From Octopus sinensis (Eukaryota): 64,000 nucleotides of DNA. Position 1 is the stretch's first letter; the number at the start of each line of letters is the position of its first letter. A program made the translations under genes and the position numbers. Shown here piece by piece: positions 1,320 to 59,708 of the stretch. The stretch is taken from NCBI RefSeq assembly GCF_006345805.1, contig NC_043015.1:39680001-39744000 (forward strand), written 5' to 3'. The notes beneath the pieces are model-generated. The model saw nothing but the letters and a program-made list of their open reading frames with translations, was not told the DNA's origin and made no database searches.

Positions 1320-1572
1320 CTTGATTTATCATAAAATGGGGGGAAATAGAAAAACAGAAAAATTGTGTCTTTAGATAGTTATAACAATAGGGGTGATGGT
1401 GGTGGTTGTGGTGGTGGTGAAACTGCTACCATTTTGTTTGTCAATATCAAAAACAATGTTGGTGGTGCTTTCATTTACTTTGCTTTCTACCAATTCTGTA
1501 GATTGTCTGGTCTGAATGACAGGGGAACGTATCCAGGTCACCATCAACATCCCTTTTTCCATGCTAGCATGG

Positions 1573-1900
1573 TACTAAGCCTAGTACTTATTCTATCGGT
1601 TCCTTTTGCCGAACCGCTAAGTTACAGGGACCTAAACACACCAGCATTGGTTGTCAAGCGATGTTGGGGGGGGGGTACAAACACAGACACACAAACATAT
1701 ACATACACATTCATACATATATATATATATACATGTATACGACGGGCTTCTTTCAGTTTCCGTCTACCAAATCCACTCACAAGGCTTTGGTTGGCCCGAG
1801 GCTATAGTAGAAGACACTTGCCCAAGGTGCCACGCAGTGGGACTGAACCCAGAACCATGTGGCTCATAAGCAAGCTACTTGCCACACAACCACGCCTACG
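1573..1900 (-). mobile_element. SINE-A: tRNA-derived head, CORE-like GGCACCTTGGGCAAGTG box, internal (TA)/(TG) microsatellite
   Basis: At least 12 recognisable copies in the window share head, box and tail. tRNA-derived octopus SINEs (OK, OR1, OR2) are known, but I cannot assign the exact name without a library search. Confidence 0.85.
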
Positions 1901-6549: not shown

Positions 6550-7192
6550 GAGGCAATGACGAAAGATTGAGACCTCTGGAGATATGCTGTGACTGCGACG
6601 ACCTGACAAATAATGTGAGTTCATGGCTGTTTCCTGCACCAGCTTCACATAGAAGCCCCAGTCCTTCCAAAGTGCCCTGGATTGCAGGACGGCCTGCTGT
6701 ACTTACCTTGGATCGTAAGGTGAGCTGCTGTGCTTGAGGAGACCTATTGAGTCAAGTACATCACCATCAAAAAAATCAAATGGAAATTGTAGTTGTGATA
6801 CCAGTGCCAGTGGCACGTAAAATGCATCATCTGTACGTGGCAGATGCCAGCGCTGCCTTGACTGGCTTCCGTGCTGGTGGCACGTAAAAAGCACCATCCG
6901 TACATGGCTGATGCCAGCGCCGCCTTGACTGGCTTCCGTGCTGGTGGCACGTAAAAAGCACCACCCGATTGTGGCCGATGCCAGCCTCCCCTGGCCCCTG
7001 TGCCAGTGGCACGTAAAAAGCACCCACTACACTCATGGAGTGGTTGGCGTTAGGAAGGGCATCCAACTATAGAAACACTGCCAGATCAGACTGGAGCCTG
7101 GTGCAGCCTCCTGGCTTCCCAGACCCCTGTCGAACTGTCCAACCCATGCTAGCATGGAAAACGGACGTTAAACGATGATGATGATGATGATG
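6550..7192 (+). mobile_element. RTE-clade LINE 3' end (family C) with 67-bp internal tandem units and (GAT)n tail
   Basis: 5' end translates EAMTKD*DLWRYAV, resembling the RTE ORF2 C-terminus. Shared 3' region and (GAT)n tail occur in about 10 copies in the window. Confidence 0.8.
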
Positions 7193-7792: not shown

Positions 7793-8002
7793 CTGAAATT
7801 AAAACACGAACAAACCAACTCGTGTATTTATATAGCCTTATTCTATCGTATAGGTTGCACGGCTGATAGATGTGTGTTTAATATATTTATATTTGCTTGC
7901 AGAACTTTTCCAGAACTTTTTACCATATTTTGGGAAGGCAGTGAAATTACAAACTCACTGAGAAGCTATCATTTCATTGATTATTTTGTGTGTATTTGTG
8001 TG

Positions 8003-8008
8003 TGTATG

Positions 8009-8041
<33 letters not shown>

Positions 8042-9328
8042 ATGTGTATATGTATGTGTATGTGTATATGTATGTGTATATGTATGTATATATGTATATG
8101 TATGTATATATGTATATGTATGTATATATGTATATGTATGTGTATATGTATATGTATGTGTATATGTATGTATATATGTATATGTATGTGTATATGTATG
8201 TATATGTATGTATATATGTATGTGTATATGTATATGCATATGTATGTATATATATATATATATACGTATATGCGCACATTGAACATTCCCGACCAGAAGT
8301 TTTGCTCACACTGTAAGCATTGCTAGCTATTTGTTGATGACTTTAAGCCTGACTAAAGCTGGACCAATCATATGTCTGGATTTTGCATCTATCAAGAAGG
8401 ATGTTCACAAACTATTGATTACATGCTGGTTTAATTGAATTAATTTTGTTGTTTCGACTGAGTTGTTGCTGATGAAAGATCAATCTCTACAAAAGAAGTC
8501 AATAAAACACACACACACACACACTTTGGTAGCTGTGATTTCTCATTCCTTTTATTGCTAAACTGTCTGGGCTTAGAAAATGGCCGGTTCCTGAACTTAA
8601 TCAGGCAAACAATGGATCTTGGCAAAAATCCATTGTTTAGTCATTTCAATGGATTAAAATAAAGCTATTAAGTATATATATATATATATTATATATATAT
8701 ATATGTATGTGTATGTGTATATGTATGTGTATGTGTATATGTATGTGTATATGTATGTATATATGTATATGTATGTATATATATATATATATGTATGTGT
8801 ATATGTATATGTATGTGTATATGTATGTATATATGTATATGTATGTATATATGTATGTATATGTATGTATATATGTATGTGTATATGTATATGCATATGT
8901 ATGTATATATATATATATACGTATATGCGCACATTGAACATTCCCGACCAGAAGTTTTGCTCACACTGTAAGCATTGCTAGCTATTTGTTGATGACTTTA
9001 AGCCTGACTAAAGCTGGACCAATCATATGTCTGGATTTTGCATCTATCAAGAAGGATGTTCACAAACTATTGATTACATGCTGGTTTAATTGAATTAATT
9101 TTGTTGTTTCGACTGAGTTGTTGCTGATGAAAGATCAATCTCTACAAAAGAAGTCAATAAAACACACACACACACACACTTTGGTAGCTGTGATTTCTCA
9201 TTCCTTTTATTGCTAAACTGTCTGGGCTTAGAAAATGGCCGGTTCCTGAACTTAAATCAGGCAAACAATGGATCTTGGCAAAAATCCATTGTTTAGTCAT
9301 TTCAATGGATTAAAATAAAGCTATTAAG

Positions 9329-10413: not shown

Positions 10414-11147
10414 TACAGCTTCTATCCAGTTGCTCAACTTACTAGAAAAAGTAGGCAAATCTACCTCAAATCACGCTTTGCTTGGATCGAAACTGGAATA
10501 TTGATGATTGGGATGGCCTTTGATTATTGGTTTCTTGGGGCTAAATGACAGTAAACCATCATTACTGTCATCATCATCATTGTCATCATCATCATCATTA
10601 CTTCCTCCTCCACCTTCCCCTCCAACAGCTGGGACCCCAAATTTTCCCATCATCCCTCCCTCCCTCCACTCCACTCCGCTGCCTGACAATTCCTGATAAT
10701 TTCCAATTAATTTTGTAAATGTCACATCTATATGTGATGGATCTATTTTCCACTCCCCCCCCCCCGCTGTTCTCAGTTGTAAATATAGGTCAAGTGAGTC
10801 CAGATCCCCCCCCACCATACCCACTTCACTTCCCTCTTATCTATAGTTCCCTTTTTTTCTATGGTGTGGGGGAGGGAGCGTGTTGTGGATAGGAAGAAAG
10901 AAGTCTAATGCCATTTTGCTGCTTCCAAGACAGCCACTGTCCTATTTTCTTGGCTCTCAGATAAGTCCCAGCTCAGGAGGAAGGCAACAATTTGTCTTCA
11001 GATTCGTTATTACTGAATATAATTGGATTTCAGATGTTTTGTTATTCTATGAGTCTGATATCCCTGTTGACATGATATCACTGTTGATGGGTGTGAGATA
11101 TGTGTGATGTATGGATGTGGTGTGATACCACTGTTTTTTTTTTTTAT

Positions 11148-11510
11148 CTTTCTTTTATTTGTTTCAGGCATTAGATTGTGGCCATGCTGCAGCACGAATG
11201 AATCGACCCCAGTACTTCTTTTTTTAATTTTTTTAAGCTCAAATTCTTTCAGTCCGTTTTGCTAAATTGCTAAGTTATGGGGACGTAAACACACCAACAT
11301 CAGTTGCCAAGTGGTGGTGGGGGACAGAAACAAAGACACACACACACACGACGGATTTCTTTCGGTTTCTTTCCACTAAATCCACTCACAAGGCTTTGGT
11401 TGGCCTGAAGCTTTAGTAGAAGACATACTTGTCCAAGGGACCATGCCAAGGGACTGAACCCAGAGCTATGTGTTTGTAAAGCAAGCTTCTTACCCTACAG
11501 CCACACCTGT
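11148..11510 (-). mobile_element. SINE-A
   Basis: Family motifs as in 1573-1900. Confidence 0.8.
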
Positions 11511-13027
11511 ACATCACTGTTGATGTGACAAGAATTTAAATATCTTCCTCAAGGTTTTGGAATGGAAACTTTTCTGTTTCAAGATCCCAGTTTTGTTTTT
11601 TCCTTCTTTTTGACTGTTTTATGTCTTCTGTGATGTCATGTGGGAAATTTATTCTTGTTGTAGTTGTTGTTTGCAGATGCCTGACTGTCTCTCGCTGCCA
11701 TTAACATCTCTTCACTGTAGGGATTCGTGCCTATTGTTGTTGAGTACTGGGGGTCAGCCCTGATCCAGAAAACTTACAATCAGTGCATTTAAGACATGAT
11801 TGTCCGATTTTCTCAGTCACTGTTCACCTTGGAGTACATTGTTCATTGTGTTCTTCTGTCTTTGATGTTAGAATATGATTTGAGGGATACCAAGCTACAC
11901 TTTCCAGCTGATTAAGCAACATCTTTGGCTAATGTTACTCGTGGTTTGTCCAGTTAGGTAAACTGATGACCGCAGTGTCCTTTACCTGAGATATAAGATT
12001 TATGAGACACAATAATGGAGTCTGGGGAAATTTAGTGATGGCCTGTCTCATGAAAATTGGTTAATAAATTTCATGGAAAACAACAGAGCTGTGTGCTGCG
12101 CTTTCAAGGTCTCCTGAAAACCTCACAGTGCATAAAGTATACAAAACATCTGTGTTTTAACTCTTTAGTGGAGGATAAATATTACCTTCTGGTATTAACA
12201 CCACTCCTGTTGCTATTAGTTATACAAACTTAGTTTATTGTACAAACTATATTGTTGAAATGTCAGATGTGATCAGTATGTGAGCATAAATGGCCTATTG
12301 GTTAAAGTAGTGGACAACCAGTCTAGAGGTGGACCATTGTTGGTGGTCTTGTACTTAGTGTCCATTAGCAAGATACTTCACACTGTGCTTGTCGTCAGGT
12401 GGAATGGTGTAGAAGAAAGAACTCACAACTGTGATTAGAAACTGAACAATAAAATTGAAAACATCTTTTTACTGGGTCTGGAAGAAGAATCAGTTTCCAT
12501 GGCCTTCACAGGTCCTCCTTCCTAGGCTGGGAAATTTAATGCCAGTTGGATGACTGACCTTTCTTTGGATATAGTTTAGTTGGGCTGTGACCCCCAAGAG
12601 GTGAGTTGATTGAGCGGTTAAAGCATCAGAGTGTCTTGTGGTATTTGTTCTGGCCCTATATGTTCAAAATACCATCGATGTCAGCATTACCTTTCTTTTT
12701 TTCAGGTTTAATAAAATAAATAAAGTACCATTGCTAGGGTTAACTCTGCTCCTCTTTCTCATTTATTTTCTTTCGTCCCTTGAAGAGAGGAGGGTCCCAT
12801 CACTTCAAAAGTGCTGCAAACACTCTCTGTTATAACACAACCTCCTTTATTATTAACTTTATGAAGAGTTAAAGCACCCCCTCCATAGGGCCTGGTTCAC
12901 TCCACAAAACAGTGCAGATTATAACTAAATTCCTTCTGTACTTTATTGTTGATGTAAGAAATTGTTTTATTAATTAATCTTTATGTAATTATTGGATGTA
13001 ACTGATAGTATTGAGATATTCTGCTGT

Positions 13028-13109
13028 GACTAATAAGTGTCTCTCGCTTTTGTTTTCCTTTCTAGGTAAGTGAAGTTTTGTTTTATTATGACGATCTACG
13101 ACCGTAAGT
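13028..13109 (+). other. Recursive-splice-like site (branch point, pyrimidine tract, AG|GTAAGT) with a second donor 38 nt downstream
   Basis: GACTAAT (13028-34), TCTCTCGCTTTTGTTTTCCTTTCTAG|GTAAGT (junction 13065/13066), and ACC|GTAAGT (13103/13104). Confidence 0.6.
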
Positions 13110-13259
13110 ATTCTAATTACTTCCTAATTAACCATCGGGCCAATATAAACAGGACTGCAACAGTGATGAATGCCACAGCACAGCCAGCATGAGATTTGAA
13201 ACCGTATCGTGCTGATTAATCTCAGCATCTCTGTACTTAGAGAGTAAGACCGAAACTAG

Positions 13260-13308
<49 letters not shown>

Positions 13309-14094
13309 GTATATATATATATGAATGACATAAATGTTTGTGTAAGCTTTTTTCTTTTCTGTCATACAATAATATACACACCCTGATACAGACTCACTCA
13401 TATTTATGATAAAAAAAAATTTCTCTATAAATATTCACTATCTCAATAAACCTCATTATTTTAATGCCTTCTGTAACACTCGGAAAAAAGTATTGCGCAC
13501 ACATACACACACACACACAGAAGCTTGTGTGTGTGTGTGTGTAGGGTAGAGATAGTGGTCATGTGTTAATTCACAGTGGGAGGCGGGGTGGGGGAGATGA
13601 AGGTGAGGTTTTCTCTTAAGTTGAATATTAATATTTTTTTGTTTTCTTCTCCATGTCAAAACCGAAAGCTGTATTGAGGAAAAAAAAATGTGATTGTTGA
13701 GTGTTTGGGAAGTAATTTAAGGCCAAAACCAGCTGGGTTCAGAGACCAGGTTCTAAATTTCTGACAAATACATAAATCAAAGCATCACTGAATTGTCTGA
13801 AGAATCAGGGGAGGAGGGGTGGCTTGTCACAGGCTAAAATTCCTTCTGATTTATTTAATAATTTTATAGAAACAACCCCCCCCCCATTAACAATGACAAA
13901 ACCCGGATTTAAAACACTGGATGATGATGATGATGATAAACTCAGTCGTGTTTTTTGAGTTTTTTATGACCCCCCCCCCCTCCACATTTTCTTTTGTTCC
14001 GTTGCTTAGTCTGAAAATGCTTTGCCAAGTTGTTGAAGACTCTCTTGTCCTGGGGCAGTGCCAGGTGGAAGTTTCCGTTGTTGACATCACTATC

Positions 14095-14465
14095 TTTTAT
14101 CTTTTACCTGTTTCAGTCATTAGACTGTGGCCATGCTGGGGCATCGCCTTGAAGAATTTTAGTCAAACGAATTGACCCCGGGACTTTTTTTTAAAGCCTG
14201 GTACTCATTCTGTTGGCCCCTTTTGCCAAATCATTAAGTTATGGGGATGTAAACACACCAATATCAGCTGTGTCAAGTGGTGGTGAGGAACAAACAGACA
14301 CAACGACACACACATGCATACACACACACATGATGGGCTTCTTTCAGTTTCCATCTACCAAATCCATTCATAAGGCTTTGGTTAGCCCTGGGCTGTATAT
14401 CATAGAAGACACTTGCCCAAGGTGCCATGCAGTAGGACTGAACCCTAAACCATGTGGCTGGCAGG
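14095..14465 (-). mobile_element. SINE-A
   Basis: Family motifs. Confidence 0.8.
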
Positions 14466-16159
14466 CAAAGTCCAAATTCTACACAGCTGAGGTTTCAGAC
14501 ATTTTCTTACTGTAATTTCATTCGTTATGTTTGTGTGGTTGTTGTTGTTGTTGTTAATTAGCATCTTCTCTTCAAGGTTAGAGTTTAGAGAAGGTTTGTG
14601 TCCTGTACAGAAATGTTTGTGTAATCCTGAAGGCATTTATGTCCTCGACAACAAAATGTTTTTGTGTCATTTACGCAACAATTCTGTGGAGGACAAAAAT
14701 TTCAGTTTTATTTCTTGGAAAGGAAATATTTCAATTCAACATTATATTTCTCAATAACGTTTATATCAGCATGTTTTACACACACACACATACCAGGTTG
14801 TTTTATTGTATTGCTTTTAGTAGTTATTCCCTTGTCGGAGGAGCTGGTGGCGGAGGAGGGTGGTGGTCTCATGGGACCCCCATTGGAACGAGGAAGTGGC
14901 TGAAAGGGTGGGGTTTCAATGGTTAATGTTTAATTTGAATTATGATCCGGTGTGGATGTATATATGTTAGTGAACCCGTGTGCATGTAATAATAATAAAG
15001 TACATGTGTTTGTGTGAGGAGATAATTGTGTGTGTGTGTGTGTGTGTCTCATGCATTACAGCTGTGTACTAAACACTAATGATGGTTGAGTCACAAATGT
15101 TCCATAAAGCTAAAGTGTCAGTCTTTAATGGGAAATGCCTGTGACTATACTGTCCTTCCTTCCCTTCTTCCCTCCCTCATCACTGCTGTTCTGTCTCTTT
15201 AACCCAGACACTGATCCCATCTAGGTCCCGCTTTACATGACAGCAAATACAATAGGGGTCACTGGCTTGGTTTATTTACAGTTCAAACATACATCAACAA
15301 CAACAACACTTTCTGCTATAGGCACAAAGCCTGAAATTGTGGGTGAGGGGACTAGTCGATTACATTGACCCCCAGTACGGAACTGGTATTAAAATGGACT
15401 TTCCTGTTGAAGACGATGTAGAAGTGTTCAGCCTTTGCTGAATAACCTGTACATAGGATCTGCTACTATGATAATTATGAGAATACTCTTGTGTTCTTCT
15501 CTGTCACAGCATATGAATGAGAAAGGAAGGGGTGATGGTAAACTGGTAGTGGGAGTGTTTCAACTCTGTGTGTGTATATAAAAGGGAGTTTGTGTGTGTG
15601 TGTGTGTGTGTGTGTACAATGGAAGTGGGATGGTGAACATTCAGCACTGAAAAGGAAAATCAAACAGCGTTCCAACTCTGCGTGAGTATATGTATGTATG
15701 TGTGTGTGTATGCAAGAAAGTATGTGAATGTTTGTATGTGTGAACCAGAGTTCTTTCAGTAACAAATGACGATCGATGTCACATCTCAAAAGACAGCCAC
15801 TAAATAACATTGACAAGCATATTAATTTGATTTACCATCCATATTTATATATAAAATTCCACAATTAGCCGTTATTTTTGACGGCATGAGGTCAGCTAGT
15901 TTGTTTGTAGTGACCAATTGTTTCTGCCGCACATTAACTCCCTCCCTCCATCCAATCGCTTTTGCCTGAGTAGGTGTATGGTATAGTATATCACGTATCA
16001 GGTGTCAAAGTACAAAATGTGATGAATCAATTGCTTTAACTGACCAGTTGACCATTATGATTATTTGATCTGGATAATTTCCTCCCCTTTTCCTATGTAA
16101 GTACAGGTTGTACCCCAGCCACTCTCTAAATATCTACATGCTTCATATACTCTTTTCTA

Positions 16160-18865: not shown

Positions 18866-19099
18866 TGTGTGTGTGTGTGTATGTATAATCTTCTCAGTAG
18901 AATAAATTATGCAGATATACTTATTTAAATAATATTGATGTTGTTAATTTATTGCAGGATATTTGTCATTTTTCGTTTTTTATTTTTACTTCAGCTCATG
19001 AAACAGACATTATCATCTGGAGAAGTTAACCAAAATATATACTAGCTTCTCATACATGGGGACTATGTCTCACTTCATGGAACAGGAATTGACTTGAAG

Positions 19100-19633
19100 G
19101 AAATAGTAGTTGTGATACCTGTGCCGGTGGCACATAAAAAGCACCATCCGAACGTGGCCGATGCCAGCGCTGCCTCGACTGGCTTCTGTGCCGGTGGCAC
19201 GTAAAAAGCACCATCCGAACGTGGCTGATGCCAGCGCTGCCTCGACTGGCTTCTGTGCCGGTGGCACGTAAAAAGCACCATCCGAACGTGGCTGATGCCA
19301 GCGCTGCCTTGACTGGCTTCTGTGTCGGTGGCACGTAAAAAGCACCATCCGAATGTGGCTGATGCCAGCGCCGCCTTGGCTGGCTTCTGTGCTGGTGCCA
19401 CGTTAAAAGCACCAACCGATCGTGGCTGCTGCCAGACTCCCCTGGCATCTGTGCCGGTGGCACGTAAAAAGTACCCACTACACTCGCGGAGTGGTTGGCG
19501 TTAGGAAGGGCATCCAGCTGTAGAAACACTGCCAGATCAGACTGGAGCCTGGTGCAGCCTCCTGGCTTCCCAGACCCCGGTCGAACCGTCCAACCCGTGC
19601 TAGCACGGAAAACGGATGTTAAATGATGATGAT
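19100..19633 (+). mobile_element. RTE family C 3' end with an expanded 67-bp tandem array
   Basis: Unit heads at 19127, 19194, 19261, 19328, 19395 and 19457; (GAT)n tail. Confidence 0.85.
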
Positions 19634-27050: not shown

Positions 27051-27689
27051 TATATTATGTATTTATGTTTTAGTTTAGAAATGATTAGTAAAAAAAAAGA
27101 ATTCTTGACATGTAAAGTTGAGCATATTTATTGAGAATTAGGGTTTCCTGCTGTTGGTCCTTAGGTTTTGTATTTCCATATTGGAACCCTTGCCATTGTA
27201 ACTGACGGAGTGCCAATATATGTGCATGGGAGATGGTCTTACTCTTTCCATTTCATATTTCACTTACGAGGCATTGGTCAGCCTATGGCTGTAGCAAAAG
27301 AAACTGGCCAACGGTACCTCCCACCACATACAATGGAAACAAACTCTAAATTATATGGTTCCGAGGTGAATTTTAGAACATTCAGCCATTCTTGCATCTT
27401 TGAAGAATGTGTTTGTATGTGTGTGTGTGTGTATACATGTGTATACACACACACACCAAGCTGAATAGTACCCATCTGGTTTAATATCACAATATTTTGG
27501 TTGCAGGACACACTAGTTCTGCGAGAGGTTACAACTCTTAAAATTGTAGATTTAAAGCCAAGCTAGAAATAACTTCTTTATATAGAACTAATTTGTGTGT
27601 TCTAGGGTAGTTTATATAATAATTGTTGTGTTGAGTGGCGGCCATGGAGGAAGAGAGCGGTGTACATTATATACGTATATATATAATAT

Positions 27690-28051
27690 ATTATATATAT
27701 GTATGTATGCATATGTATGTATGTATGTATGTATGTATATGTATGTATATGTATGTATGTATATGTATGTATATGTATGTATGTATATGTATGTATGTGT
27801 ATATATGTATATGTATGTATGTGTGTGTATGTATATGTATGTATGTATATGTATGTATGTATGTGTATGTATGTGTGTGTATGTATGTATGTGTATGTAT
27901 ATGTATGTATGTATGTGTATGTATGTATGTATATGTATGTATGTGTATATATGTATGTATGTGTATATGTATATGTATGTATGTGTATGTATGTGTGTGT
28001 ATGTATGTGTATATGTGTGTATGTATATATGTGTATGTATGTATATGTTTA

Positions 28052-28090
<39 letters not shown>
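27690..28090. repeat. (TATG)n/(TA)n compound microsatellite
   Basis: Seen directly. Confidence 0.95.
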
Positions 28091-28091
<1 letters not shown>

Positions 28092-28094
28092 TTA

Positions 28095-28130
28095 TATGTG
28101 TGTGTGTGTAGGAAAGAATGGTATACATAC

Positions 28131-28183
<53 letters not shown>

Positions 28184-28226
28184 ATATATGCATATATATG
28201 TGTGTGGTGTGTAGGAAGAGAATGGT

Positions 28227-28273
<47 letters not shown>

Positions 28274-28325
28274 GCATATATATGTGTGTGTGTGTAGGAA
28301 AGAGAATGGTATACATACATATATA

Positions 28326-28356
<31 letters not shown>

Positions 28357-28542
28357 ATATGCATATATATGTGTGTGTGTGTAGGAAGAGAATGGTATCA
28401 TACATATATATTATATATATATATTATATATATGCTATATATGTGTGGTGTGGTGTGGAAGAGAATGGTATACATACATATATATATATATTAATATATA
28501 TATCATATTGTGGTGTGTGTGTGTAGGAAGAGAATGGTATAC

Positions 28543-28576
<34 letters not shown>

Positions 28577-28613
28577 TATATATGTGTGTGTGTGTGTGTA
28601 GGAAGAGAATGGT

Positions 28614-28645
<32 letters not shown>

Positions 28646-28685
28646 GCATATATATGTGTGTGTGTGTGTGTAGGAAGAGAATGGT

Positions 28686-28718
<33 letters not shown>

Positions 28719-28730
28719 CATACATATATA
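28095..28730. repeat. Compound minisatellite: about 8 units with core GTAGGAAGAGAATGGTATACATAC embedded in (TA)n/(TG)n
   Basis: Cores near 28108, 28210, 28294, 28380, 28456, 28521, 28598 and 28670. Confidence 0.9.
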
Positions 28731-28849
28731 TAAAAGCACGTGAAGTGCCTGTTTTTTTTTATGTGCAAATATGTTTGTGTGTGTGTGTGTGTGTGTTGTG
28801 TAGGAGTAGCAGTTGTTGTTGAATGACTTAACAAGCTGACTGAGTGAAA

Positions 28850-30479: not shown

Positions 30480-30805
30480 ACATCATCATCGTCATCATCA
30501 TCATTGTTTAACGTCCGTTTTCCATGCTAGCATGGGTTGGACAGTTCAACTGGGGTCTGGGAAGCCAGAAGGCTGCATCAGGCCCAGTCTGATCTGGCAG
30601 TGTTTCTACGGCTGGATGCCCTTCCTAATGCCAACCACTCCGAGAGTGTCGTGGGTGCTTTTTATGTGCCACCTGCACAGGTGCCAGACGAGGCTGGCAA
30701 ACGGCCACGATCGATTGGTGCTTTTTACGTGCCACCGGCACAGGGGCCAGTTGGGGTGGCGCTGGCAATGGCCACGTTCAGATGGTTCTCTTACGTGCCA
30801 GCAGC
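30480..30805 (-). mobile_element. RTE family C 3' end
   Basis: Family motifs and (GAT)n tail. Confidence 0.8.
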
Positions 30806-31629
30806 ACTGCAAAACAACAGTTGATGGGAGTGGAGAAAAATTGACTGTGTTGGGGTAGCAGGTAGCTGGGTGCGGGATTTATAGAGTTGGGGTATATTTG
30901 ATTGTTGTTGGCCAATAAAACGGTTAATGTGACACAAGTTTCTCAGGGATTAAATATTACTGCTGGAAGGGACTGTCTGAGTACAAGTCTCTCGGGTTAA
31001 GTGGTACTCCCTAAAGGGGCTATTGAGACACAAATATCTCAGCCATCATGAATTACTCTGTGAAAGAATTTCAGTTTGAAAATTAAGCTAGAGGGACAGT
31101 TTTTTGAATGAAATAAATATTCTTGATATCAGAATATATTTGAGGGTTTAACAATGAAAATAGTATATGTCCCCTTATAGTCTTTCAGATTTGTTATTGT
31201 ATTGTAAGATTATACCAGCTTCACACAGTGTTTTGTGTGTGATCCCTGAGAGTCTCAGAGTCCAAGGTTGAATAACATGGAGCCTGTTACCCCCACTTAC
31301 CATTGGGTTCCCTCTAATGGTGTCAGGGGGAGAAAAAGAGGGGGTAGTATTTTAGTATTTAATGAGCAGGAAATTAGAAGGATAAGAAGAATTTTCCCTT
31401 TAATTATGCATTCATTAACATCATTCAGTAATTAACTCAACAGATTGGGAGGCCTTCATGACTGTCTCCCTTAGCTTTGTCTTGCAATTTCTCTTTCTCT
31501 CTCTCTCTCCCTCTTTCTTTTTAATCTTATCCCCTTTTTTCTTTAAACGTTTACAAAGTTGTTGAGAATAGTTAATCTGCTGCATAATCATTTAATCTGG
31601 TCTGTTTGTGTGTGTGTGTGTGCATGCAT

Positions 31630-31684
31630 GTGTGTGTGTGTATATATATATATGTTTATACACCTATACATGTATGTATATATA

Positions 31685-31742
<58 letters not shown>

Positions 31743-32055
31743 GTATGTATGTATATGTATGTATATGTCTGTATGTATGTATTAGATGTAGGTATGTATG
31801 TTGTTCTATATATGTGGTATGTATGTATATGTATGCGTATGTATGTATGTATATATGTAGTATGTATATCTGTATATATATGTATGTATGTAGTATATAT
31901 ATATGTATGTATGTATATATATATGTATGTATGTATATGTATATATATGTATGTATTGTATGTATATATATGTATGTATGTATGTATATATATGTATTGT
32001 ATGTATGTATATATATGTATGTATGTATGTATATATATATATGTATGTATGTATA

Positions 32056-32091
<36 letters not shown>

Positions 32092-32109
32092 TATATATAT
32101 GTATGTATG

Positions 32110-32142
<33 letters not shown>

Positions 32143-32830
32143 TTATATATATGTATGTATGTATATATATGTATGTATGTATATATATATATGTATGTAT
32201 GTATATATATATGTATGTATGTATATATATATGTATGTATGTATATATATATGTATGTATGTATATATATATGTATGTATGTATATATATATGTATGTAT
32301 GTATGTATATATGTATGTATGTATATATATATGTATGTATATATGTATATATATATGTATGTATGGATGTATGTATATATAGTATTATGTATATATATGT
32401 ATGTATGTATGATATATATATGTGATGTATGTATATATATATGTATGTATGTATATATATATGTATGTATGTATATCTATATGTATGTATGTAGATATAT
32501 ATGTATGTATGTATATATATATGTATGTATGTATATATTATGTATGTGGTATAGTATATATAATATATATATATATCTATATATAATAGTATGTATGTCT
32601 ATATGTATGTATATATATGTATGTATGTATGTATTATGTATGTATGTTATATATATGTATGTATGTATATATTAGGTATGTGTAGTATATATATATGTAT
32701 GTTGTATGTATAGATATATATATGTATGTGTATATATATATATATGTATGTGTATATATATATTATATTTGTATGTTATATATATACAATGTATGTATAT
32801 ATATATATATATTTATATATACATACATAC
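31630..32830. repeat. Long (TATG)n/(TA)n compound microsatellite
   Basis: Seen directly; source of the YVCM-type ORFs. Confidence 0.95.
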
Positions 32831-33289
32831 ATACACAGATTGCACATACATCTGTATATACTTATTGTTGTCTATTGAATGGCTGTTGGACAAACATAGA
32901 AGCAAGCATACATACACACACATAAACACACAGACACACCTATCTATGTTTCTCTGTCTCTCCTCACTCACACATGCACACGCACACTCACACACACGTA
33001 TATATATATATACGTGTGTAGAGAGAGATGGATGACTGGATAATTACTGTGACTAACATATTGACAATTCCATATAAATAGTGTACTTTTGCTATCTCCT
33101 CCTAGTATAATGTTTGACAATTTGGTACATCTGTGCAGTGGTGGTAGTGGTAGGGGTGGTGGACATCCATTGGTAAAGTATGTAGTGGTGGTGGCAGTGG
33201 TCGTGGGGACATTAGTATGTATATATATATATGTGTGTGAATGTGTGTGTGTGTAGCTATATATACACTATATCTGTGGAGTAGTGGTA

Positions 33290-37879: not shown

Positions 37880-38158
37880 TAAATCAAATGGAAATTGTAG
37901 TTAAGATACTCGTGCCGGTGACATGTAAAAGCAGCAACCGAACGTGGCTGTTTGCCAGCCCGCTCTGTCCCCTGTGCCGGTGGCACTTAAAAGCACCCAC
38001 GACACTCACGGAGTGGTTGGTGTTAGGAAGGGCATCCAACTGTAGAAACACTGCCAGATCAGACTGGAGCCTGGTGCAGTCTCCCGGCTTCCCAGACCCC
38101 GGTCGAACCGTCCAACCCATGCTAGCATGGAAAACGGACGTTAAACAATGATGATGAT
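37880..38158 (+). mobile_element. RTE family C 3' end
   Basis: Family motifs, a single internal unit and (GAT)n tail. Confidence 0.8.
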
Positions 38159-39012: not shown

Positions 39013-39395
39013 GTTATTGCTGTGTGGTAAGAAGTTTGCTTTCCAACCACGTGGTTCCAGGTTCAGTCTGCTTGTGTGGCACCATGGATAAGCATCTTCT
39101 ACTCTACCGTTGAGCCACCCAAATCCTTGTGAGTGGATTTGGTAGATGGAATCTTAAAGAATCCTGTTGTATATATGTGCATGTGTGTGTCTGTCTGTCT
39201 GTTTGTCTCTGTCCACCACTTTACAACCAGTGTTGGTGTGTTTAAGTCCCCATAACTTAGCAGTTCAGTAAAAGAAACTGATAAAATAAGTACCAGGTTT
39301 AAAAGTGAAAAATAAGTCCTAGGGTCGAGTCATCAGACTGAAATTCTTCAAGTAGGTGCTCCAGCATGACCGCAGTGCAATGACTGAAATAGGTT
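39013..39395 (+). mobile_element. SINE-A
   Basis: Family motifs. Confidence 0.75.
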
Positions 39396-39980
39396 GAAGA
39401 ATATATTTATATGTGCGTGTATATATAAATGTGTGTGTGTGTGTGTGTGTACTTGCATGTATTGTCAATGTAACTATAGTTGTTGCTTAGTACCAAGTTT
39501 GGTGATTGAAGTTGTACCATCAAAACCAATCCTGGTGTGACCATCCCACCTTTTACTGTAGTAACAGGCAGTATAATTAATAATTATTAAGACAATGAGG
39601 TCTGATGTAAGGGGAAGTTGGCTGTTATTTCTACCAGGTCAAGCAGTCATGTAGAAACCCCTCATATATTTAGTGGGGTCGGGGTGTTGGTGGTGATGGG
39701 GTCGGGGTCGGAGTGTTTGTTGGGGAGGATTTATGGGGAACTGAAGGCAAGAGGTCTTCATTTTGTCTTTATTACTCGTTTGTATTCGTTTCAAGTGGAG
39801 ATAAGAGATGTAATTAACTGTGTGATTAGTGGCAGAAGAGATAAGAAGCAGGTGAGACAGGTGAGGCAGATACCTTCTTCAGCAGAAGCAGCTGTTTACT
39901 TGCGAATTGATGGATGATGGATTCATTTAGCTATAATGAGAGAGAGAAAGAGAGAGTAAGAGAGAGAGAAAGAGAGCGTA

Positions 39981-40033
<53 letters not shown>

Positions 40034-40112
40034 CTGGGGAGACTTAGCAAGCTGACCTCTTGACACAGGGAGGGCACCTGACTGATGAGATATGTGTGTG
40101 TGTGTGTGTTAT

Positions 40113-40492
40113 TCATTTACTTGTTTGTCATTTGACTGTGGCCATGCTGGAGCACTGCCTTTAGTCGAGCAAATTGACCCCCCCAGGACTTATTCTTTGT
40201 AAGCCCAGTACTTATTCCATCGGTCTCTTTTGCCGAACTGCTAAGTTAGGGGACGTAAACACACCAGCATCGGTTGTCAAACGATGTCGGGGAGGACAAA
40301 CACACACACACACATATATACATATATACGATATGGGCTTCTTTCAGTTTCCGTCTACCAAAACCACTCACAAGGCTTTGGTCAGCCTGTGGCTATAGTA
40401 GAAGACACTTGCCCAAGGTGCCATGCAGTGGGACTGAACCCAGAACCATGTGGCTGGTAAGCAAGCTACTTACCACACAGCCACTCCTGCTT

Positions 40493-40529: not shown

Positions 40530-40930
40530 TAGTGTGTGTGTGTAATTTGTTTTTACTGGCTTCAGTCATTAGACTGAGGCCATGCTGGGGCACTGCTTTG
40601 GAGAATTTTTAGGCAAGTGAATCAACCTCAGTTTTGTTTTTTTGTTTGAAACCTGGTACTTAATCTGTTGGTCTCATTTGCTGAACCACTAAGTTACAGG
40701 GATATAAACACACCAACACTGGTTGCCAAGCAATGGTGGGGGACAAACACAGACTCAAAAACCTTCCCCCCCTACACATATATACGACAGGCTTCTTTCA
40801 GTTTCCATCCACCAAATCTGCTCAGCTCAAGCCCATATAAGAAGACACTTGCCCAAAATGTCACACAATGGGACTGAACTTGGAACCATGTAATTGGGAT
40901 GCAAGCTTCTTACCACACAGCCACACCTAA
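40113..40930 (-). mobile_element. Two tandem SINE-A copies (40113-40490, 40550-40930)
   Basis: Family motifs. Confidence 0.8.
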
Positions 40931-48140: not shown

Positions 48141-48528
48141 AGGCGTAGGAGTGGCTGTGTAGTAAGTAGCTTTCTTATGAACAACATGGTTCCAGGTTCA
48201 GTCCACTGCGTGGCACCTTGGGCAAGTGTTTTCTATTATAGCATCGGGCCGACCAAAGCCTTGTGAGTGGATTTGGTAGACAGAAACTGAAAGAAGGCTG
48301 TCGTATATATGTGTGTGTGTCTGTGTTTGTCCCCATAACATTGCTTGACAACCGATGCTGATGTGTTTACTTCCCCATAACTTAGCAGTTCAGCAAAAGA
48401 GACCAATAGAATAAGTACTAGGCTTACAAAGAATAAGTCCTGGGGTCAATTTGCTCGACTAAAGGCGGTGCTCTAGCATGGCCACAGTCAAATGACTAAA
48501 ACAAGTAAAAGAGTAAAAAGAGTAAAGA
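48141..48528 (+). mobile_element. Full-length SINE-A with (AAAAGAGT)n tail
   Basis: Family motifs. Confidence 0.85.
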
Positions 48529-53230: not shown

Positions 53231-53886
53231 CAGACAGAACGTTCTGTGTAGCATATTCTTTGATTAGTTTATTAGTTTAGTCAGTCTATTGTTGTAATTA
53301 ATTGTGGCCATACTGCAGCACCACCTTGAAGAGTTTTAATGAATTAAATTCTCCCCGGTACTTAATGTTTTAAAGTCTGATCCTTATTGTATCAGTCTTT
53401 TTGTGCGAAACTATTAAGTTATGGGGGACATAAACAAACAAACAAACAAACTGTTTGTCAGTTGGAGAGAGACAAACACAAAGAACAGATCCTCACACAC
53501 ACACATATGATAGGCTTCTGCATAGTTTGCATTCACCAAATTCGCTCACAAAGCTTCGGTCAGTCTGGAACCATGGTAGAAAATATTTTCTCCAAGTGCT
53601 GTCCAGTGGGACTGAACCCCAAACCACATAGCTGTGAAGCAAACGTCTTCACCACCCGTCCATTATATCATTTTAAAATCTTTCACTTAGGGTGTCTCAA
53701 AACCCGAACCCAACATATTCAATCATTTCTTGAAGAAATCTTAGACTCTGATCCCTAACAAACCCCTAGTGAGTGTCATCCATTTTTTAACAGAACTTTT
53801 GATTTTATGGTCTCACGGTGGCACATAAAAAGCACTTTTTGAGTTTTTAGGCCTCATGAAGGCAATGTGGCCGATACCAGTGTCAT

Positions 53887-54361
53887 GTAACCATGGCAAC
53901 ACCACGAAGCAATAATGGAACTGCCATTAATGCTACATGATGGTGTTGGGCTTCATGGAGACAAGGACGAATGACTGAGACCTTTGGCAATATGCTGTGC
54001 TTGAGAAGAAGACCCATCAAGCCAAGTGAAATCGTAGTCGTGGCAGATACTGGTGTCACCCAACTGGCACCGGTGCCCATGGCACATAATAGCATCCATT
54101 ACACTCACTGTGTGGTTGGCATTAGGAAGGGCATCCAGCTGTAGAAACTTTGCCAAATCAGACTGGAGTCTGGTGCAGCCCCTCAGCTTACCAGTCCTGG
54201 TCAAACTGTCCAACCCATGCTAGCATGGACAATGGGTGTTAAATGATGATGATAATGATGATGATTTTGTAGAAGAGATGAAGATAAAAGGTGACCTTGA
54301 AACACCATCATGTAGCATGAATGGCAGTTCCATTATTGCTTCGTAGTGTTGCCATGGTTAC
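53887..54361. mobile_element. Element with 61-bp inverted repeats, interrupted by an RTE family C 3' fragment (53948-~54265)
   Basis: 53887-53947 matches the reverse complement of 54301-54361 at 59/61 positions. Confidence 0.75.
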
Positions 54362-55669
54362 TAATTACATCAACAAAACCACTTAACGAGAGCCTCTCTA
54401 ATGTTTGCCAGACTTGCTACAAATAGCAGTCAATCGTCCCTCAAATCACACTCTGTCATCTCAGAAAAGGCCTTCATGAATAATGTAAACGTTCAGTATG
54501 TAACAGTGCATAAGAAAACGGGATGGTCATGGCTGGAATGCTTTTGATCAAGCATCTGCACTGGCAGGCTAGCCTAGGGCTAAATAACAGCAGCATTAAC
54601 TAAATCAAGAAAGGTTGTGTATCTGTTTATTCGAATACCTGCGCATGCAGGGGTGGAGGTTGAATATGATTGTGCACACATGCACGTGTAGATTTGTGTG
54701 TGTGTGTGTGTGTGTGTGTGTACACTGCATGCACTATCTGTCTTTAAGTGCAGAAAGTACCCTTTTGATATCAAAGGAGTAAAGCTCCTTCATAGATCTA
54801 CCACTCTTTGTAGAATTCCTCTTTGACTGTGGGGGCCCTTTATTTCCCAATAAATCCTATTTACCGATTCCAAGTAAATTCTTTGAAGATGCTTCCCAAA
54901 TTACTTTCTTTGCTGAAAAATCGAATAACAAATCCTTCTTTCTTCCATTAAATATTGCTGCTGCTTTTCTCCTACAACACATTCCTTCTCGGATTAAAGT
55001 CCCCCACCCGTTCCCCCACTCTTTCATTCCCTCTCTCACACGCTTCCTCTTTCTCTTCCTCTCTCCTTCTTTCTTCATTTCTTTCTGCTTCTCTTTCCTT
55101 CTAATAAAAGTCCTCGTATTTACTGACCTTTACTGACCTTCTCTCCTGCTCTGTCTTTTCTCCCCCCCCCCAACTGGCCTTTGATTCTCTAAAATGTTGA
55201 CCAAAGGGATTATAACTCAAAGCAACAAAATATCATTAAGCTGGACAACACGAAACATCCAGCGTGTCTCACCATTGTCCACTTTTGCCCACCTTTGACC
55301 GCCTGCCAATAGGTTTTAAGATGAAATCCATTGATCTCATTCCCATGTGTCCACTAGATGGGACACTTTGACATAGCTCAGGTCAGTTAGCTCATCCACG
55401 AGATTTTCTGGGATTCTTAGCAATTTGTCCATGGATAGCTTTATGACTCAACATCAAAGAATTGGGGCAAAATGCTGGCTGTTAAAAGTTCCTTGCAATT
55501 TAGGAAATAGAAAATTTGGCACAAGCCCAGAAAGTTCAGGGAAGCATGCGAGGGGATTGCATCGAGCCCCAACGGTCAACATGTACTTACTTCATTGACC
55601 TGGAAAAAATTAAAGGCAAGGTAGGCCCTCACGGGATTTGAATTCAGAATGTAAAGACAAACAGAATAG

Positions 55670-55988
55670 GTTCAGGTGTGGCTGTGTGGTAAGAAGCTTG
55701 CTTCCCAACCACATGGTTCCGGGTTCAGTTCCACTGCATGGCACCTTGGGCAAGTGGCTTCTACTATAACCTCAGACTGACCAAAGCCTTTTGAGTGGAT
55801 TTGGTAGACGGAAACTGAAAGAAGCCTGTTGTATAATATATATATATATATATACGTGTGTATTTATGTGTTTGTGTTTGTTCCCCCCACCACCACCATC
55901 GCTTGACAACCAATGTTGGTGTGTTTATGTCCCTGTAACTTAGCAGCTCGGCAAAAGACATCAATAGAATAAGTACTAGGCTTACAGA
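55670..55988 (+). mobile_element. SINE-A (3' truncated)
   Basis: Family motifs. Confidence 0.8.
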
Positions 55989-56073
55989 GTATGTCATTAA
56001 CTAAATATGCTGGAATATATTATGTTGATGTCCACCAAGAGATATCTGAGGACAGTTTCAGGTGAGTTTAGAT

Positions 56074-57474: not shown

Positions 57475-58140
57475 CGGTGAGTTGTAGCACACACACACAG
57501 TATCTCTGATATGATTGTGAATGTAACACATAGTATTTCTGTTTTGATGGTAAGTGTAACACATAATATACAGTGTCTTTTGTGACGTGTGTGTAACAAA
57601 CAGTACAGTGCCTCTGTTGTGATGAGTGTAACATACATTACAATTTCTCTGTGATGTGATAAGTGTAACATATACTACGTTTTCTGCGATGTGAAATGGT
57701 TAGTGTAACACACTAAGTTTTTCTGTGATGTGGGGAGTGTAACACACTACACTTTCTCTGTAACATGATGAGTGTAACACACTACAGTTTCTCTGTGACA
57801 TAATGAGTGTAACATACACTACATTTTCTGGGATGTGACATGGTGAGTGTAACACGCTGCAGCATCTCTGTTGTGACATGGTGAGTTAACACACACAATA
57901 TCTCTGTTGTGACATGGTGAGTGTAACACACTAAGTTTCTCTGATGTGGGAAGTGTAACACACTACAGTTTTCTCTGTAACACGATGAGTGTAACACAGT
58001 ACAGCATCTCTGTTTTGATATGGTGAGTGTAACGCTACAGTTTCTCTGTGACGTGATGACTGTAACACACTACAGTTTCTCTGTTGTAATGTGGTCAGTG
58101 TAACACACACACAGTACAGTATCTGTGTTGCGATGTGGTT
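57475..58140. repeat. ~36-bp minisatellite, about 18 units (GAGTGTAACACACTACAGTTTCTCTGTGACATGAT-like)
   Basis: GTGTAACA recurs every 32-40 bp and the whole unit is homologous. Confidence 0.9.
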
Positions 58141-58574
58141 AGAATGGTTTTATTGATGAGTCAAATATCGACAGCTAATAACTATCAGAATCGCGTATCT
58201 GATATCTTATAAAAATTCGGTTCCTCATGGATATCCACTTTTATAGCGTAATTAGATATTTGTATGCATCTGATATCTCTTGTCAGCTTGGTTAACTTAG
58301 AGTCATCCTCTCATGATATCTTCCTCAGTGATGGAGTACTTATTAAGAACACTTGTAACCTCTCTGTAGAAAGCAGAGACAGCAAGGCTTCCATTAAGCC
58401 ATTCAAATTGCCGATATACAGAATAGATGCTATTAAGAACTGCCTGCAGTATACTAGATCTACTCCTCTACGCTCTATTTATATAAACCGTACTGAATAC
58501 ATTGTCCTTGGTCGGTGTGTTCTGCTGCCATTTTCAATCAACATCCCAAACAAACAGTTGTTCAGATTCTTTTC

Positions 58575-58965
58575 TTTTTCTTTTACTTGTTTCAGTCATT
58601 CGACTGCGGCCATGCTGGAGCACCGCCTTTAGTCGAGCAACTCGACCCCGGGACTTATTCTTTTTGTAAGCCCAGTACTTATTCTATCGGTCTCTTTTTG
58701 CCGAACCGCTAAGTGACGGGGACATAAACACACCAGCATCGGTTGTCAAGCGATGCTAGGGGAACAAACACAGACACACAAACACACACACATACATATA
58801 TACGACAGGCTTCTTTCAGTTTCCGTCTACCAAATCCACTCACAAGGCATTGGTCGGCCCGGGGCTATAGCAGAAGACACTTGCCCAAGATGCCACGCAG
58901 TGGGACTGAACCCGGAACCATGTGGTTGGTAAGCAAGCTACTTACCACACAGCCACCCCTGCGCC
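58575..58965 (-). mobile_element. Young, near-consensus SINE-A
   Basis: Family motifs with CpGs retained. Confidence 0.85.
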
Positions 58966-59274
58966 TGTTCAGATTCTACCAAAAATTGCACAGAATTCTC
59001 TCTGAAAGGAGAATTTGTTTGGATTGGTTTCAATGAAATACACTAATTATTATTTTCAATCTAAAAATATTTTCCCCCCTTAAGATGCGTGCTGTTAAGA
59101 TAAATTTCTAATTATGTCTTTTTATGTCCTGTCCTCATTTGCCATTCCATCCTGATGGCCATCACTCAACAAGCTGTGTAAACAATTTATACAAAACTTG
59201 TTATAAATTAGAAGCTAGCTTTACTGCTCTGTCACATTGCTTGGCTAATGAAACTCTCTCCAATTTTGATCAAT

Positions 59275-59293
59275 TTTATTATTATCATTATTA

Positions 59294-59348
<55 letters not shown>

Positions 59349-59547
59349 CATCATTATTATTATTATTATTGTTATTATTATTATTATTATCATTCTTCTT
59401 CTTCTCATCATCATCATCATCATCATCATTATTATTATTATCATTATTATTACTATTATTATTATTATCATCATTATTATTATTATCATCATTATTATTA
59501 TTATTATTATTATCATTATTATTACTATTATTATTATTATTATATCA

Positions 59548-59581
<34 letters not shown>

Positions 59582-59661
59582 CATTATTATTACTATTATT
59601 ATTATTATTATTATCATCATTATTACTATTATTATTATTATTATTATTACTATTATTATCA

Positions 59662-59708
<47 letters not shown>

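What the first reader, a model, noticed from the sequence alone, without database searches (positions are those of the whole stretch)
13028..13109. Textbook recursive splice site (ratchet point / RS-exon) in a long cephalopod intron
Seen: branch-like GACTAAT, a ~25-nt pyrimidine tract and TAG are immediately followed by a perfect GTAAGT, and a second perfect GTAAGT lies 38 nt later, all in non-repeat sequence. Established: this is the architecture of Drosophila ratchet points (e.g. Ubx) and vertebrate RS-exons in very long introns. Inference: a plus-strand pre-mRNA, possibly the 5' UTR intron of the gene coding from 29805, is spliced stepwise, with the 38-nt exon as the alternative outcome. 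That exon has stops in two frames and reads VSEVLFYYDDLR in the third. I am not aware of this being described in cephalopods but cannot check.
Basis: partly seen in the sequence, partly recalled or inferred. Interest (0 to 1): 0.7.

Follow-up and report, generated by a model that had tools for sequence, protein, structure and literature searches.

The report
Candidate recursive splice site, octopod DNA
A short stretch of octopus-like DNA carries, back to back, a strong "end of intron" signal and a perfect "start of intron" signal. This is the layout flies and vertebrates use to remove very long introns in steps, but sequence alone cannot show that the cell uses it here.

Summary
On the + strand there is a CTAAT branch-like motif (A at -33), a 23-nt pyrimidine tract (21/23 Y, TT at -6/-5), TAG|GTAAGT at 13063-13071, and a second GTAAGT 38 nt on. 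The sequence is unique within the window.

It is the best juxtaposed acceptor/donor site on either strand. Weaker look-alikes occur at the simulated chance rate on both strands. A site this good is expected 0.007-0.03 times per 64-kb strand by position-weight matrix (PWM) score, or 0.0003-0.003 if the exact octamer is required. The second exact GTAAGT adds about a 2% coincidence.

Every sequence-level feature reported for Drosophila ratchet points with cryptic RS-exons is met. Context fits + strand transcription. T>A skew is 6.8% in all eight bins of unique sequence. CpG decay is of the methylation type, which in octopus marks gene bodies.

Three things could not be tested with these tools: use in splicing, a host gene, and conservation. 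The "gene coding from 29805" has no support.

Verdict: a good but unproven candidate (about 0.5). If real, it is a new member of a known kind, and I found no report of recursive splicing in molluscs. Interest is modest.

The parts
13028..13034 (+). Branch-point-like GACTAAT (CTAAT fits CTRAY). The candidate branch A at 13033 is 33 nt upstream of the junction.
   Evidence: Read. Fly ratchet-point branch points lie at -36 to -21, peaking at -30. Motif only; use as a branch point is not shown.
13040..13062 (+). Polypyrimidine tract, 21 of 23 pyrimidines, with TT at -6/-5 (13060-13061).
   Evidence: Tracts with >=21/23 Y cover 1.4% of + strand and 0.4% of - strand positions. TT at -5/-6 is found in 196 of 197 fly ratchet points.
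13063..13065 (+). TAG acceptor. The candidate 3' splice junction lies after 13065.
   Evidence: 3'ss PWM score of 13.6 bits, fifth best of all + strand AG sites in the window.
13066..13071 (+). GTAAGT directly after the acceptor AG: the candidate ratchet-point (regenerated) donor.
   Evidence: 5'ss PWM score of 10.4 bits in its genomic context TAG|GTAAGT. It is the only AGGTAAGT on the + strand.
13066..13103 (+). Candidate cryptic RS-exon of 38 nt. The length is not a multiple of 3, with stops in two frames.
   Evidence: Fly cryptic RS-exons are short (about 50 nt), usually out of frame and poorly conserved. Most fly RS sites have a further 5'ss <100 nt downstream.
13104..13109 (+). Second GTAAGT (context ACC|GTAAGT): the candidate RS-exon donor, weaker than the ratchet-point donor.
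   Evidence: 5'ss PWM score of 5.96 bits against 10.36. Chance of an exact GTAAGT in this 81-nt span is about 1.8%, from the counts.

Best explanation
The site is an intronic recursive splice site (a ratchet point with a short cryptic RS-exon) in a long intron of an unidentified + strand transcript.

Proposed mechanism (inferred, not shown):
1. As the intron is transcribed, U2AF and U2 bind the CTAAT branch site, the pyrimidine tract and the AG at 13064-65.
2. U1 at the downstream GTAAGT (13104) helps define the 38-nt unit as an exon.
3. The upstream exon is ligated to 13066. This rebuilds a 5' splice site: the upstream exon end followed by GTAAGT.
4. The rebuilt donor competes with the weaker ACC|GTAAGT donor at 13104.
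5. If the rebuilt donor wins, the 38 nt leave with the rest of the intron and no trace remains in mRNA.
6. If the 13104 donor wins, a 38-nt frame-shifting or UTR exon is included.

Shown: the sequence architecture and its rarity. Inferred: transcription of the + strand, the intronic location, and every splicing step.
For: (1) All parts are present exactly as described.

(2) It is the best joint acceptor/donor site on either strand. At relaxed thresholds the real counts match simulations on both strands, at 9 and 6 against 7.1-8.8 expected. At this site's level only 0.007-0.031 per strand is expected, or 0.0003-0.003 with the exact octamer.

(3) It matches the features published for fly ratchet points. 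These are a prominent Y tract, TT at -5/-6, a branch point at -36..-21, a cryptic RS-exon of about 50 nt with its own donor and out of frame, and a downstream 5'ss <100 nt away.

(4) The ratchet-point donor is stronger than the RS-exon donor (10.4 against 6.0 bits). This is the relation that gives exon skipping in the donor-competition model.

(5) Context fits + strand transcription. T>A on + is 6.8% in all 8 bins of unique sequence, z=10.8, and T>A marks the coding strand of introns in eukaryotes generally (PMC5786239). CpG o/e is 0.33-0.43. Consensus CpGs of the local SINE copies are retained at 35%, against 68-78% for other dinucleotides. In octopus, 5mC sits on gene bodies, not on TEs or intergenic DNA (PMC9476566).

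(6) In every invertebrate tested by Shepard et al. (PMC2773006), the ratchet-point motif is 4-22 times denser on the sense strand of >50-kb introns than on the antisense strand. In that regime a strong sense-strand motif is usually real.
Against: There is no direct evidence of transcription, junctions, lariats or conservation.
- None of the collections reachable here held this locus or an orthologue.
- No host gene or flanking exon was found, so 'long intron, sense strand' rests on skew and CpG arguments. Neither is calibrated for cephalopods, and replication-linked skew could mimic the first.
- In vertebrates the same motif shows no sense-strand excess (ratio 0.9-1.5), and only about 10 efficient intronic sites are known in human. 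If large, repeat-rich cephalopod genomes behave that way, most such motifs are chance.
- Chance sites of this quality would still number hundreds to thousands per genome.
- At 38 nt the exon is at the short end for exon definition.
- There is no second strong site of this kind on the + strand of the window.
Confidence: 0.5

Rival explanations
1. A chance motif that is never spliced. A T-rich tract ending in AG happens to abut GTAAGT in DNA that is intergenic, antisense to a gene, or intronic but ignored by the spliceosome.
For: - AGGTAAGT alone occurs at the expected rate.
- Y-rich tracts are common on the + strand, at 1.4% of positions.
- By PWM score, 0.007-0.031 such sites are expected per 64-kb strand. 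That is hundreds to thousands in a genome of a few Gb.
- No exon, gene or transcript could be tied to the window.
- In vertebrates the motif shows no sense-strand excess.
- Most of the O. bimaculoides genome is described as intergenic.
Against: - The expected count for this window is well below one, and lower still with the second exact GTAAGT at 38 nt (about 1.8%).
- The TT at -5/-6 and the CTAAT at -33 would also have to be coincidences.
- Weaker look-alikes sit at chance level on both strands, while this one stands alone.
- Skew and CpG decay point to a + strand transcribed gene body.
Confidence: 0.33
2. An ordinary short exon, 13066-13103, of a + strand transcript. It could be a 5' UTR, non-coding or poison exon, included constitutively or alternatively. 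It merely begins with GTAAGT, and the regenerated donor is not used.
For: A strong acceptor and a usable donor lie 38 nt apart. In deuterostomes thousands of annotated exons rebuild a 5'ss at their start and are still included, because the exon junction complex represses re-splicing.
Against: A perfect GTAAGT at the first six exon bases is a rare coincidence for an ordinary exon. A strong regenerated donor beats a weaker downstream donor in fly and human reporters, and here it scores 10.4 against 6.0 bits. There is no coding potential or homology.
Confidence: 0.07
3. GTAAGT at 13066 is the plain donor of a conventional exon that ends at 13065, for example 12786-13065 or 12706-13065. The pyrimidine tract would then be exonic by accident.
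For: On the + strand there are acceptor-like sites at 12706 (13.3 bits) and 12786 (10.6 bits), and a perfect AG|GTGAGT donor at 12601, all within 500 nt. This gives exon-like units such as 12786-13065 (sequence).
Against: - The candidate exon has stops in all frames and no homologue.
- An exon whose last 26 nt form a top-ranked acceptor with a branch motif is about a 1-in-1000 coincidence. The site ranks fifth among + strand acceptor-like sites in the window.
- It does not explain the second GTAAGT.
Confidence: 0.04
4. The motif belongs to an unrecognised interspersed repeat or other multi-copy sequence of this genome, and has no splicing role.
For: 37% of the window is repeat by self-comparison. 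At least two SINE-like families are present.
Against: 12400-13250 has no second copy in the window and no relative in the protein or metagenome collections. The genome itself could not be searched.
Confidence: 0.03

Closest known systems
Drosophila intronic ratchet points with cryptic RS-exons (Ubx, kuz, Bx, luna; Hatton 1998, Burnette 2005, Duff 2015, Joseph 2018, Joseph & Lai 2021)
   Same: - Juxtaposed acceptor and donor around AG|GTAAGT.
- Unusually strong Y tract with TT at -5/-6.
- Branch site about 30 nt upstream.
- A short out-of-frame cryptic exon closed by a second, weaker donor <100 nt downstream.
- Non-repeat sequence.

   Different: - No RNA evidence, no conservation data and no identified host intron.
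- Mollusc rather than insect.
- At 38 nt the exon is shorter than the typical ~50 nt.
- There is only one such site in 64 kb, whereas many long fly introns carry several.
Vertebrate RS-exons (CADM2 and others; Sibley 2015, Blazquez 2018)
   Same: The RS-exon logic is the same. The exon is defined first, spliced to the preceding exon, and then the rebuilt 5'ss competes with the exon's own donor. Inclusion would introduce a frameshift or stop.
   Different: Efficient intronic sites are very rare in human (about 10), and the motif shows no sense-strand excess in vertebrate long introns. Whether cephalopods resemble this regime or the invertebrate one is unknown.
Ordinary cryptic, decoy or poison exons in long introns
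   Same: A short non-coding unit flanked by good splice signals inside presumably intronic DNA.
   Different: Those exons do not start with a full 5' splice-site hexamer directly after the acceptor AG.

Membership tests
Intronic ratchet point / recursive splice site (Drosophila type) | [quoted passage not shown] | tested here: met
   TAG|GTAAGT at 13063-13071. It is the best joint PWM score in the window on either strand.
Intronic ratchet point / recursive splice site (Drosophila type) | Prominent pyrimidine tract with TT at -5/-6 (196 of 197 fly sites) | tested here: met
   21/23 Y at 13040-13062, with T,T at 13060-13061 (criterion).
Intronic ratchet point / recursive splice site (Drosophila type) | Branch point 21-36 nt upstream of the junction | tested here: inconclusive
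   A CTAAT motif with A at -33 is present. Use as a branch point needs lariat reads.
Intronic ratchet point / recursive splice site (Drosophila type) | Cryptic RS-exon: a further 5' splice site <100 nt downstream, exon short and usually out of frame, with the ratchet-point donor the stronger of the two | tested here: met
   GTAAGT at 13104. The 38-nt exon has stops in two frames. Donor scores are 10.4 against 6.0 bits (criteria).
Intronic ratchet point / recursive splice site (Drosophila type) | Lies on the sense strand of a long intron (fly: 11-133 kb; segments median 16 kb) | tested here: inconclusive
   No exon or host gene was found. Indirect support comes from T>A skew of 6.8% on + in all bins and methylation-type CpG decay.
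Intronic ratchet point / recursive splice site (Drosophila type) | Splice junctions from an upstream 5'ss into the site, a sawtooth read density, and lariats starting at the site | not testable with these tools
   No RNA-seq or transcript collection for this organism is reachable. ORF look-ups round the site found nothing.
Intronic ratchet point / recursive splice site (Drosophila type) | The core motif is much more conserved than its flanks across related species | not testable with these tools
   No cephalopod genome collection is available. A metagenome scan for the 23-mer core gave 0 hits, and a protein-level search of flanking ORFs gave 0 hits.
Vertebrate-type expressed RS-exon | An annotated exon that rebuilds a 5'ss at the preceding exon junction and is included in mRNA | not testable with these tools
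   No annotation or mRNA data. The 38-nt unit has no coding signal.
U1 snRNA gene or pseudogene on the minus strand (ACTTACCT is the U1 5' end) | Match to the U1 covariance model beyond the 8-nt 5' end | tested here: not met
   There are no Rfam matches anywhere in the window. The minus-strand sequence diverges from U1 straight after ACTTACCT (read; U1 sequence from memory).

The most novel reading that the evidence does not exclude
Cephalopods remove their very long introns by Drosophila-style recursive splicing at ratchet points with cryptic RS-exons, and this site is one working example. That would be the first case in Lophotrochozoa. It would place the RS-exon mechanism in all three great bilaterian branches, arguing that it is ancestral or arises readily wherever introns grow long.
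Probability: 0.45. Interest if true: 0.45.

Novelty: new member of a known kind. Interest (0 to 1): 0.32.

Why it matters
Recursive splicing is documented in insects and vertebrates. The motif is also enriched in sea-urchin long introns. I found no paper on it in cephalopods or any mollusc.

Octopod genomes have very long, repeat-rich introns in neural genes, so how these are spliced accurately is a fair question. One verified site would extend a known mechanism to a new phylum. It would also justify a genome-wide sense/antisense motif test.

By itself, a single motif-level candidate does not change what specialists expect.

Tried and rejected
- **Orthologous or same-species DNA via called ORFs.** Exact look-ups of the two ORFs nearest the site found nothing on record. 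A 982-aa concatenation of all 22 ORFs from 12259-13262 against 5.8 billion proteins gave no hit.
The exhaustive phmmer search gave 8 hits. The best, P0002, is 6 summed 20-27-aa matches of 37-57% identity to a repeated unit of a 3,293-aa metagenomic protein. I treat these hits as artefacts.
- **Host gene, rest of the window.** Twenty-two of the longest ORFs hit only an O. bimaculoides protein model, through SINE-derived pieces. Pfam on 10 candidates found nothing. A splice-signal plus open-frame exon finder returned only random-looking peptides, and ORF lengths fit chance.
- **Concatenated exon candidates.** The representative search turned these away.
- **Metagenome scan** for the 23-nt core returned 0 hits. 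This says little, since cephalopod DNA is not expected there.
- **Structured RNA or known RNA family.** No Rfam or tRNA hit. The fold z-score is +0.43.
- **U1 gene on the minus strand.** Rejected.
- **First Markov simulation** timed out and was redone vectorised.
- **Papers not held.** Joseph 2018 and Sibley 2015 are not in the library. Their points are cited through.

Full report
**1. What is there**

Reading the + strand gives this layout:
- GACTAAT at 13028-13034.
- A pyrimidine tract at 13040-13062 (tctctcgcttttgttttcctttc; 21 of 23 Y).
- TAG at 13063-13065, followed at once by GTAAGT at 13066-13071.
- A second GTAAGT at 13104-13109, in the context ACC|GTAAGT.

The 38 nt between the two donors (13066-13103) read VSEVLFYYDDLR in frame 1. 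Frames 2 and 3 have stops at once (TAA, TGA). The length is not a multiple of three. The coordinates and letters of the finding are therefore correct. The only trim is that the tract is 23 nt with two G, rather than about 25.

The stretch 12400-13250 has no second copy in the window (self-BLAST/TRF mask 0% over 12900-13200). A (TA)n array begins at 13264.

**2. Is it more than chance?**

The octamer AGGTAAGT is not unusual. It occurs once per strand (13064 on +, 6708 on -), against 0.3-1.3 expected. Pyrimidine tracts are also common on the + strand, with 1.4% of positions having >=21/23 Y.

The combination is what stands out. I scored all AG and GT sites with approximate PWMs. These are human-like frequencies from memory, not trained on cephalopods. 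The site scores 13.6 bits as an acceptor and 10.4 bits as a donor, the best joint site on either strand.

Simulated 64-kb strands reproduce the real counts of weaker look-alikes:

| Threshold (3'ss, 5'ss bits) | Real, + / - | Simulated per strand |
|---|---|---|
| 5, 5 | 9 / 6 | 7.1-8.8 |
| 7, 7 | 3 / 3 | 1.6-2.1 |
| 13.59, 10.36 (this site) | 1 / 0 | 0.007 (order 3) to 0.031 (order 5) |

The null is therefore calibrated. If the exact octamer is required, the rate falls to 0.0003-0.003. An exact GTAAGT 20-100 nt downstream has about a 1.8% chance (29 GTAAGT in 128 kb).

So the window-level p is roughly 0.01-0.06 for the core, and about ten- to fifty-fold less with the second donor. That second factor was chosen after seeing the data. 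Scaled to a genome of a few Gb, chance alone would still give hundreds to a few thousand cores of this quality. The base rate of real sites is therefore what decides the matter.

**3. Fit to the known architecture**

Published features and how the site compares:
- Duff et al. [quoted passage not shown] TT sits at -5/-6 in 196 of 197 sites. Branch points lie at -36 to -21 (peak -30). Host introns are 11-133 kb, and removed segments have a median of 16 kb. The core is strongly conserved.
- Joseph & Lai (PMC8605326): each ratchet point opens a short cryptic RS-exon of about 50 nt with its own donor. The exon is usually out of frame and poorly conserved. The stronger of the two donors wins.
- Blazquez et al. 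(PMC6224609): most fly sites have a further 5'ss <100 nt downstream.

Here TT is at -6/-5 (13060-61), and the CTAAT branch A is at -33. The only intervening AG is 3 nt after the branch A. The second donor is 38 nt downstream, and the exon is out of frame. The ratchet-point donor outscores the exon donor, 10.4 against 6.0 bits. Every feature that sequence alone can show is met.

**4. Context**

I could not identify a host gene.
- It has no relative in the word-indexed search and no Pfam domain.
- In the exhaustive search it hits only artefacts. The best hit sums six weak matches to a repeated unit in a 3,293-aa metagenomic protein.
- A query of 22 long ORFs from the whole window hit only an Octopus bimaculoides protein model (A0A0L8FSD0). 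The match runs through SINE-derived fragments, and that SINE has at least 11 copies in the window. This is the only evidence for an octopod origin.
- ORF lengths and exon-like units look like chance on both strands.

Two indirect signals bear on transcription.
- *Strand skew.* T exceeds A on the + strand throughout. S_TA is 5.4% after masking tandem repeats, in 15 of 16 bins. It is 6.8% in the 40 kb that is unique within the window, in all 8 bins, z=10.8. T>A on the coding strand of introns is general in eukaryotes (PMC5786239).
- *CpG decay.* CpG o/e is 0.33-0.43 everywhere, against GpC o/e of 0.75-0.93. Consensus CpGs of the local SINE copies survive in only 35% of copies, against 68-78% for other dinucleotides. 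This is methylation-type decay. In O. bimaculoides, 5mC is concentrated on the bodies of expressed genes and is nearly absent from TEs and intergenic DNA (PMC9476566).

Together these make 'inside a + strand transcription unit' more likely than not. Neither signal is calibrated for cephalopods, and replication-linked skew is an alternative.

**5. How likely is function?**

Shepard et al. (PMC2773006) counted ratchet-point motifs in introns >50 kb against their complementary strands.

| Group | Sense/antisense ratio |
|---|---|
| Fly | 21.7 |
| Sea urchin | 8.2 |
| Beetle | 8.0 |
| Bee | 4.0 |
| Mosquito | >>10 |
| Vertebrates | 0.9-1.5 |

The background is about 0.1 per 100 kb. No mollusc was tested.

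If cephalopods follow the invertebrate pattern, real sites would outnumber chance ones several-fold on a sense strand, and this site would very probably be real. If they follow the vertebrate pattern (about 10 efficient intronic sites in human), it would more likely be chance.

I combined four quantities: the two regimes, a 0.2-0.6 prior that the + strand is sense-intronic, the chance rate, and a 4-8-fold likelihood gain from the downstream donor. My rough posterior ranges from 0.25 to 0.9. I state 0.5.

**6. Rivals**

- Chance or unused motif (0.33).
- An ordinary included 38-nt exon whose rebuilt donor is not used (0.07).
- GTAAGT at 13066 as the plain donor of a conventional exon ending at 13065 (0.04). 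Within 500 nt upstream the + strand has a perfect AG|GTGAGT donor at 12601 and acceptor-like sites at 12706 and 12786.
- An unrecognised repeat (0.03).
- A U1 gene on the minus strand is excluded, and there is no notable RNA structure (z=+0.43).

**7. Novelty and verdict**

Full-text searches found no paper on recursive splicing in cephalopods, octopus or molluscs. The few papers holding both terms mention them incidentally.

If verified, this would be a new member of a known kind in a new phylum. That is useful but not surprising, since the RS-exon mechanism is already regarded as shared across metazoans.

The claimed host gene is unsupported. The decisive tests (RNA-seq junctions and lariats, octopod alignments, a genome-wide sense/antisense count) lie outside these tools.

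Noticed in passing
window 1560-1900, 11139-11509, 14077-14468, 40109-40490, 40551-40928, 53353-53655, 58557-58970, 63675-64000 (+); 39019-39401, 48141-48528, 55664-55990 (-): A SINE-like family of about 380 nt has at least 11 copies at 68-88% identity. Translated pieces of it are embedded in the O. bimaculoides protein model A0A0L8FSD0 ('SH3 domain-containing protein'), so that model probably contains exonised or mis-annotated repeat. Consensus CpGs are retained in only 35% of copies, against 68-78% for other dinucleotides.
   Followed up: partly
window 1-64000: There is a persistent T>A excess on the + strand (6.8% in unique sequence, all 8 bins) and uniform CpG depletion (o/e 0.33-0.43). GC skew is not consistent. 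This fits one + strand, germline-methylated transcription unit spanning the whole window, but it is not calibrated against the rest of the genome.
   Followed up: partly
window 12601, 12706, 12786 (+): A cluster of strong + strand splice-like signals lies just upstream of the finding. There is a perfect AG|GTGAGT donor at 12601, and acceptor-like sites sit at 12706 (13.3 bits) and 12786 (10.6 bits). These could be chance in T-rich sequence, or small non-coding exons of the same transcript.
   Followed up: partly
window 13063-13075 and 13118-13127 (+): The ratchet-point core (UAGGUAAGUGAAG) can pair with a downstream UUACUUCCUA. This is the only stem in the centroid fold, and it loops out the 38-nt unit and the second donor. 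Overall folding is no better than shuffles (z=+0.43), so it is probably chance.
   Followed up: partly
window 8002-8460 and 8672-9115: A tandem segmental duplication of about 460 bp at 95% identity (period about 660 bp). It includes a compound TG/TA microsatellite.
   Followed up: partly
window 27668-28731, 31633-32833, 59276-59729: Very long compound microsatellites: (TA/TG)n arrays of about 1.1 and 1.2 kb, and a 454-bp (TTA)n array. They create spurious ORFs of up to 355 aa.
   Followed up: no
window 57587-58110 (+): A minisatellite with a 35-nt unit (higher-order 71/106/144 nt). The unit contains GGTGAGTGTAACAC, so it contributes a run of donor-like GTGAGT motifs on the + strand.
   Followed up: no
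window 6782-7089, 19041-19540, 37912-38062, 54064-54161 (same orientation); 30589-30807 (opposite): A second interspersed family built on an internal 67-nt tandem unit (5.4 units at 19119-19475). It gives recurrent 'FYVPPAQ...LDALPNANHS' pseudo-ORFs.
   Followed up: no
It sits directly after a (CA)n/(CT)n array and has no real homologue. The phmmer E-value of 2e-18 comes from summing six weak matches to a repeat in a metagenomic giant protein.
   Followed up: yes
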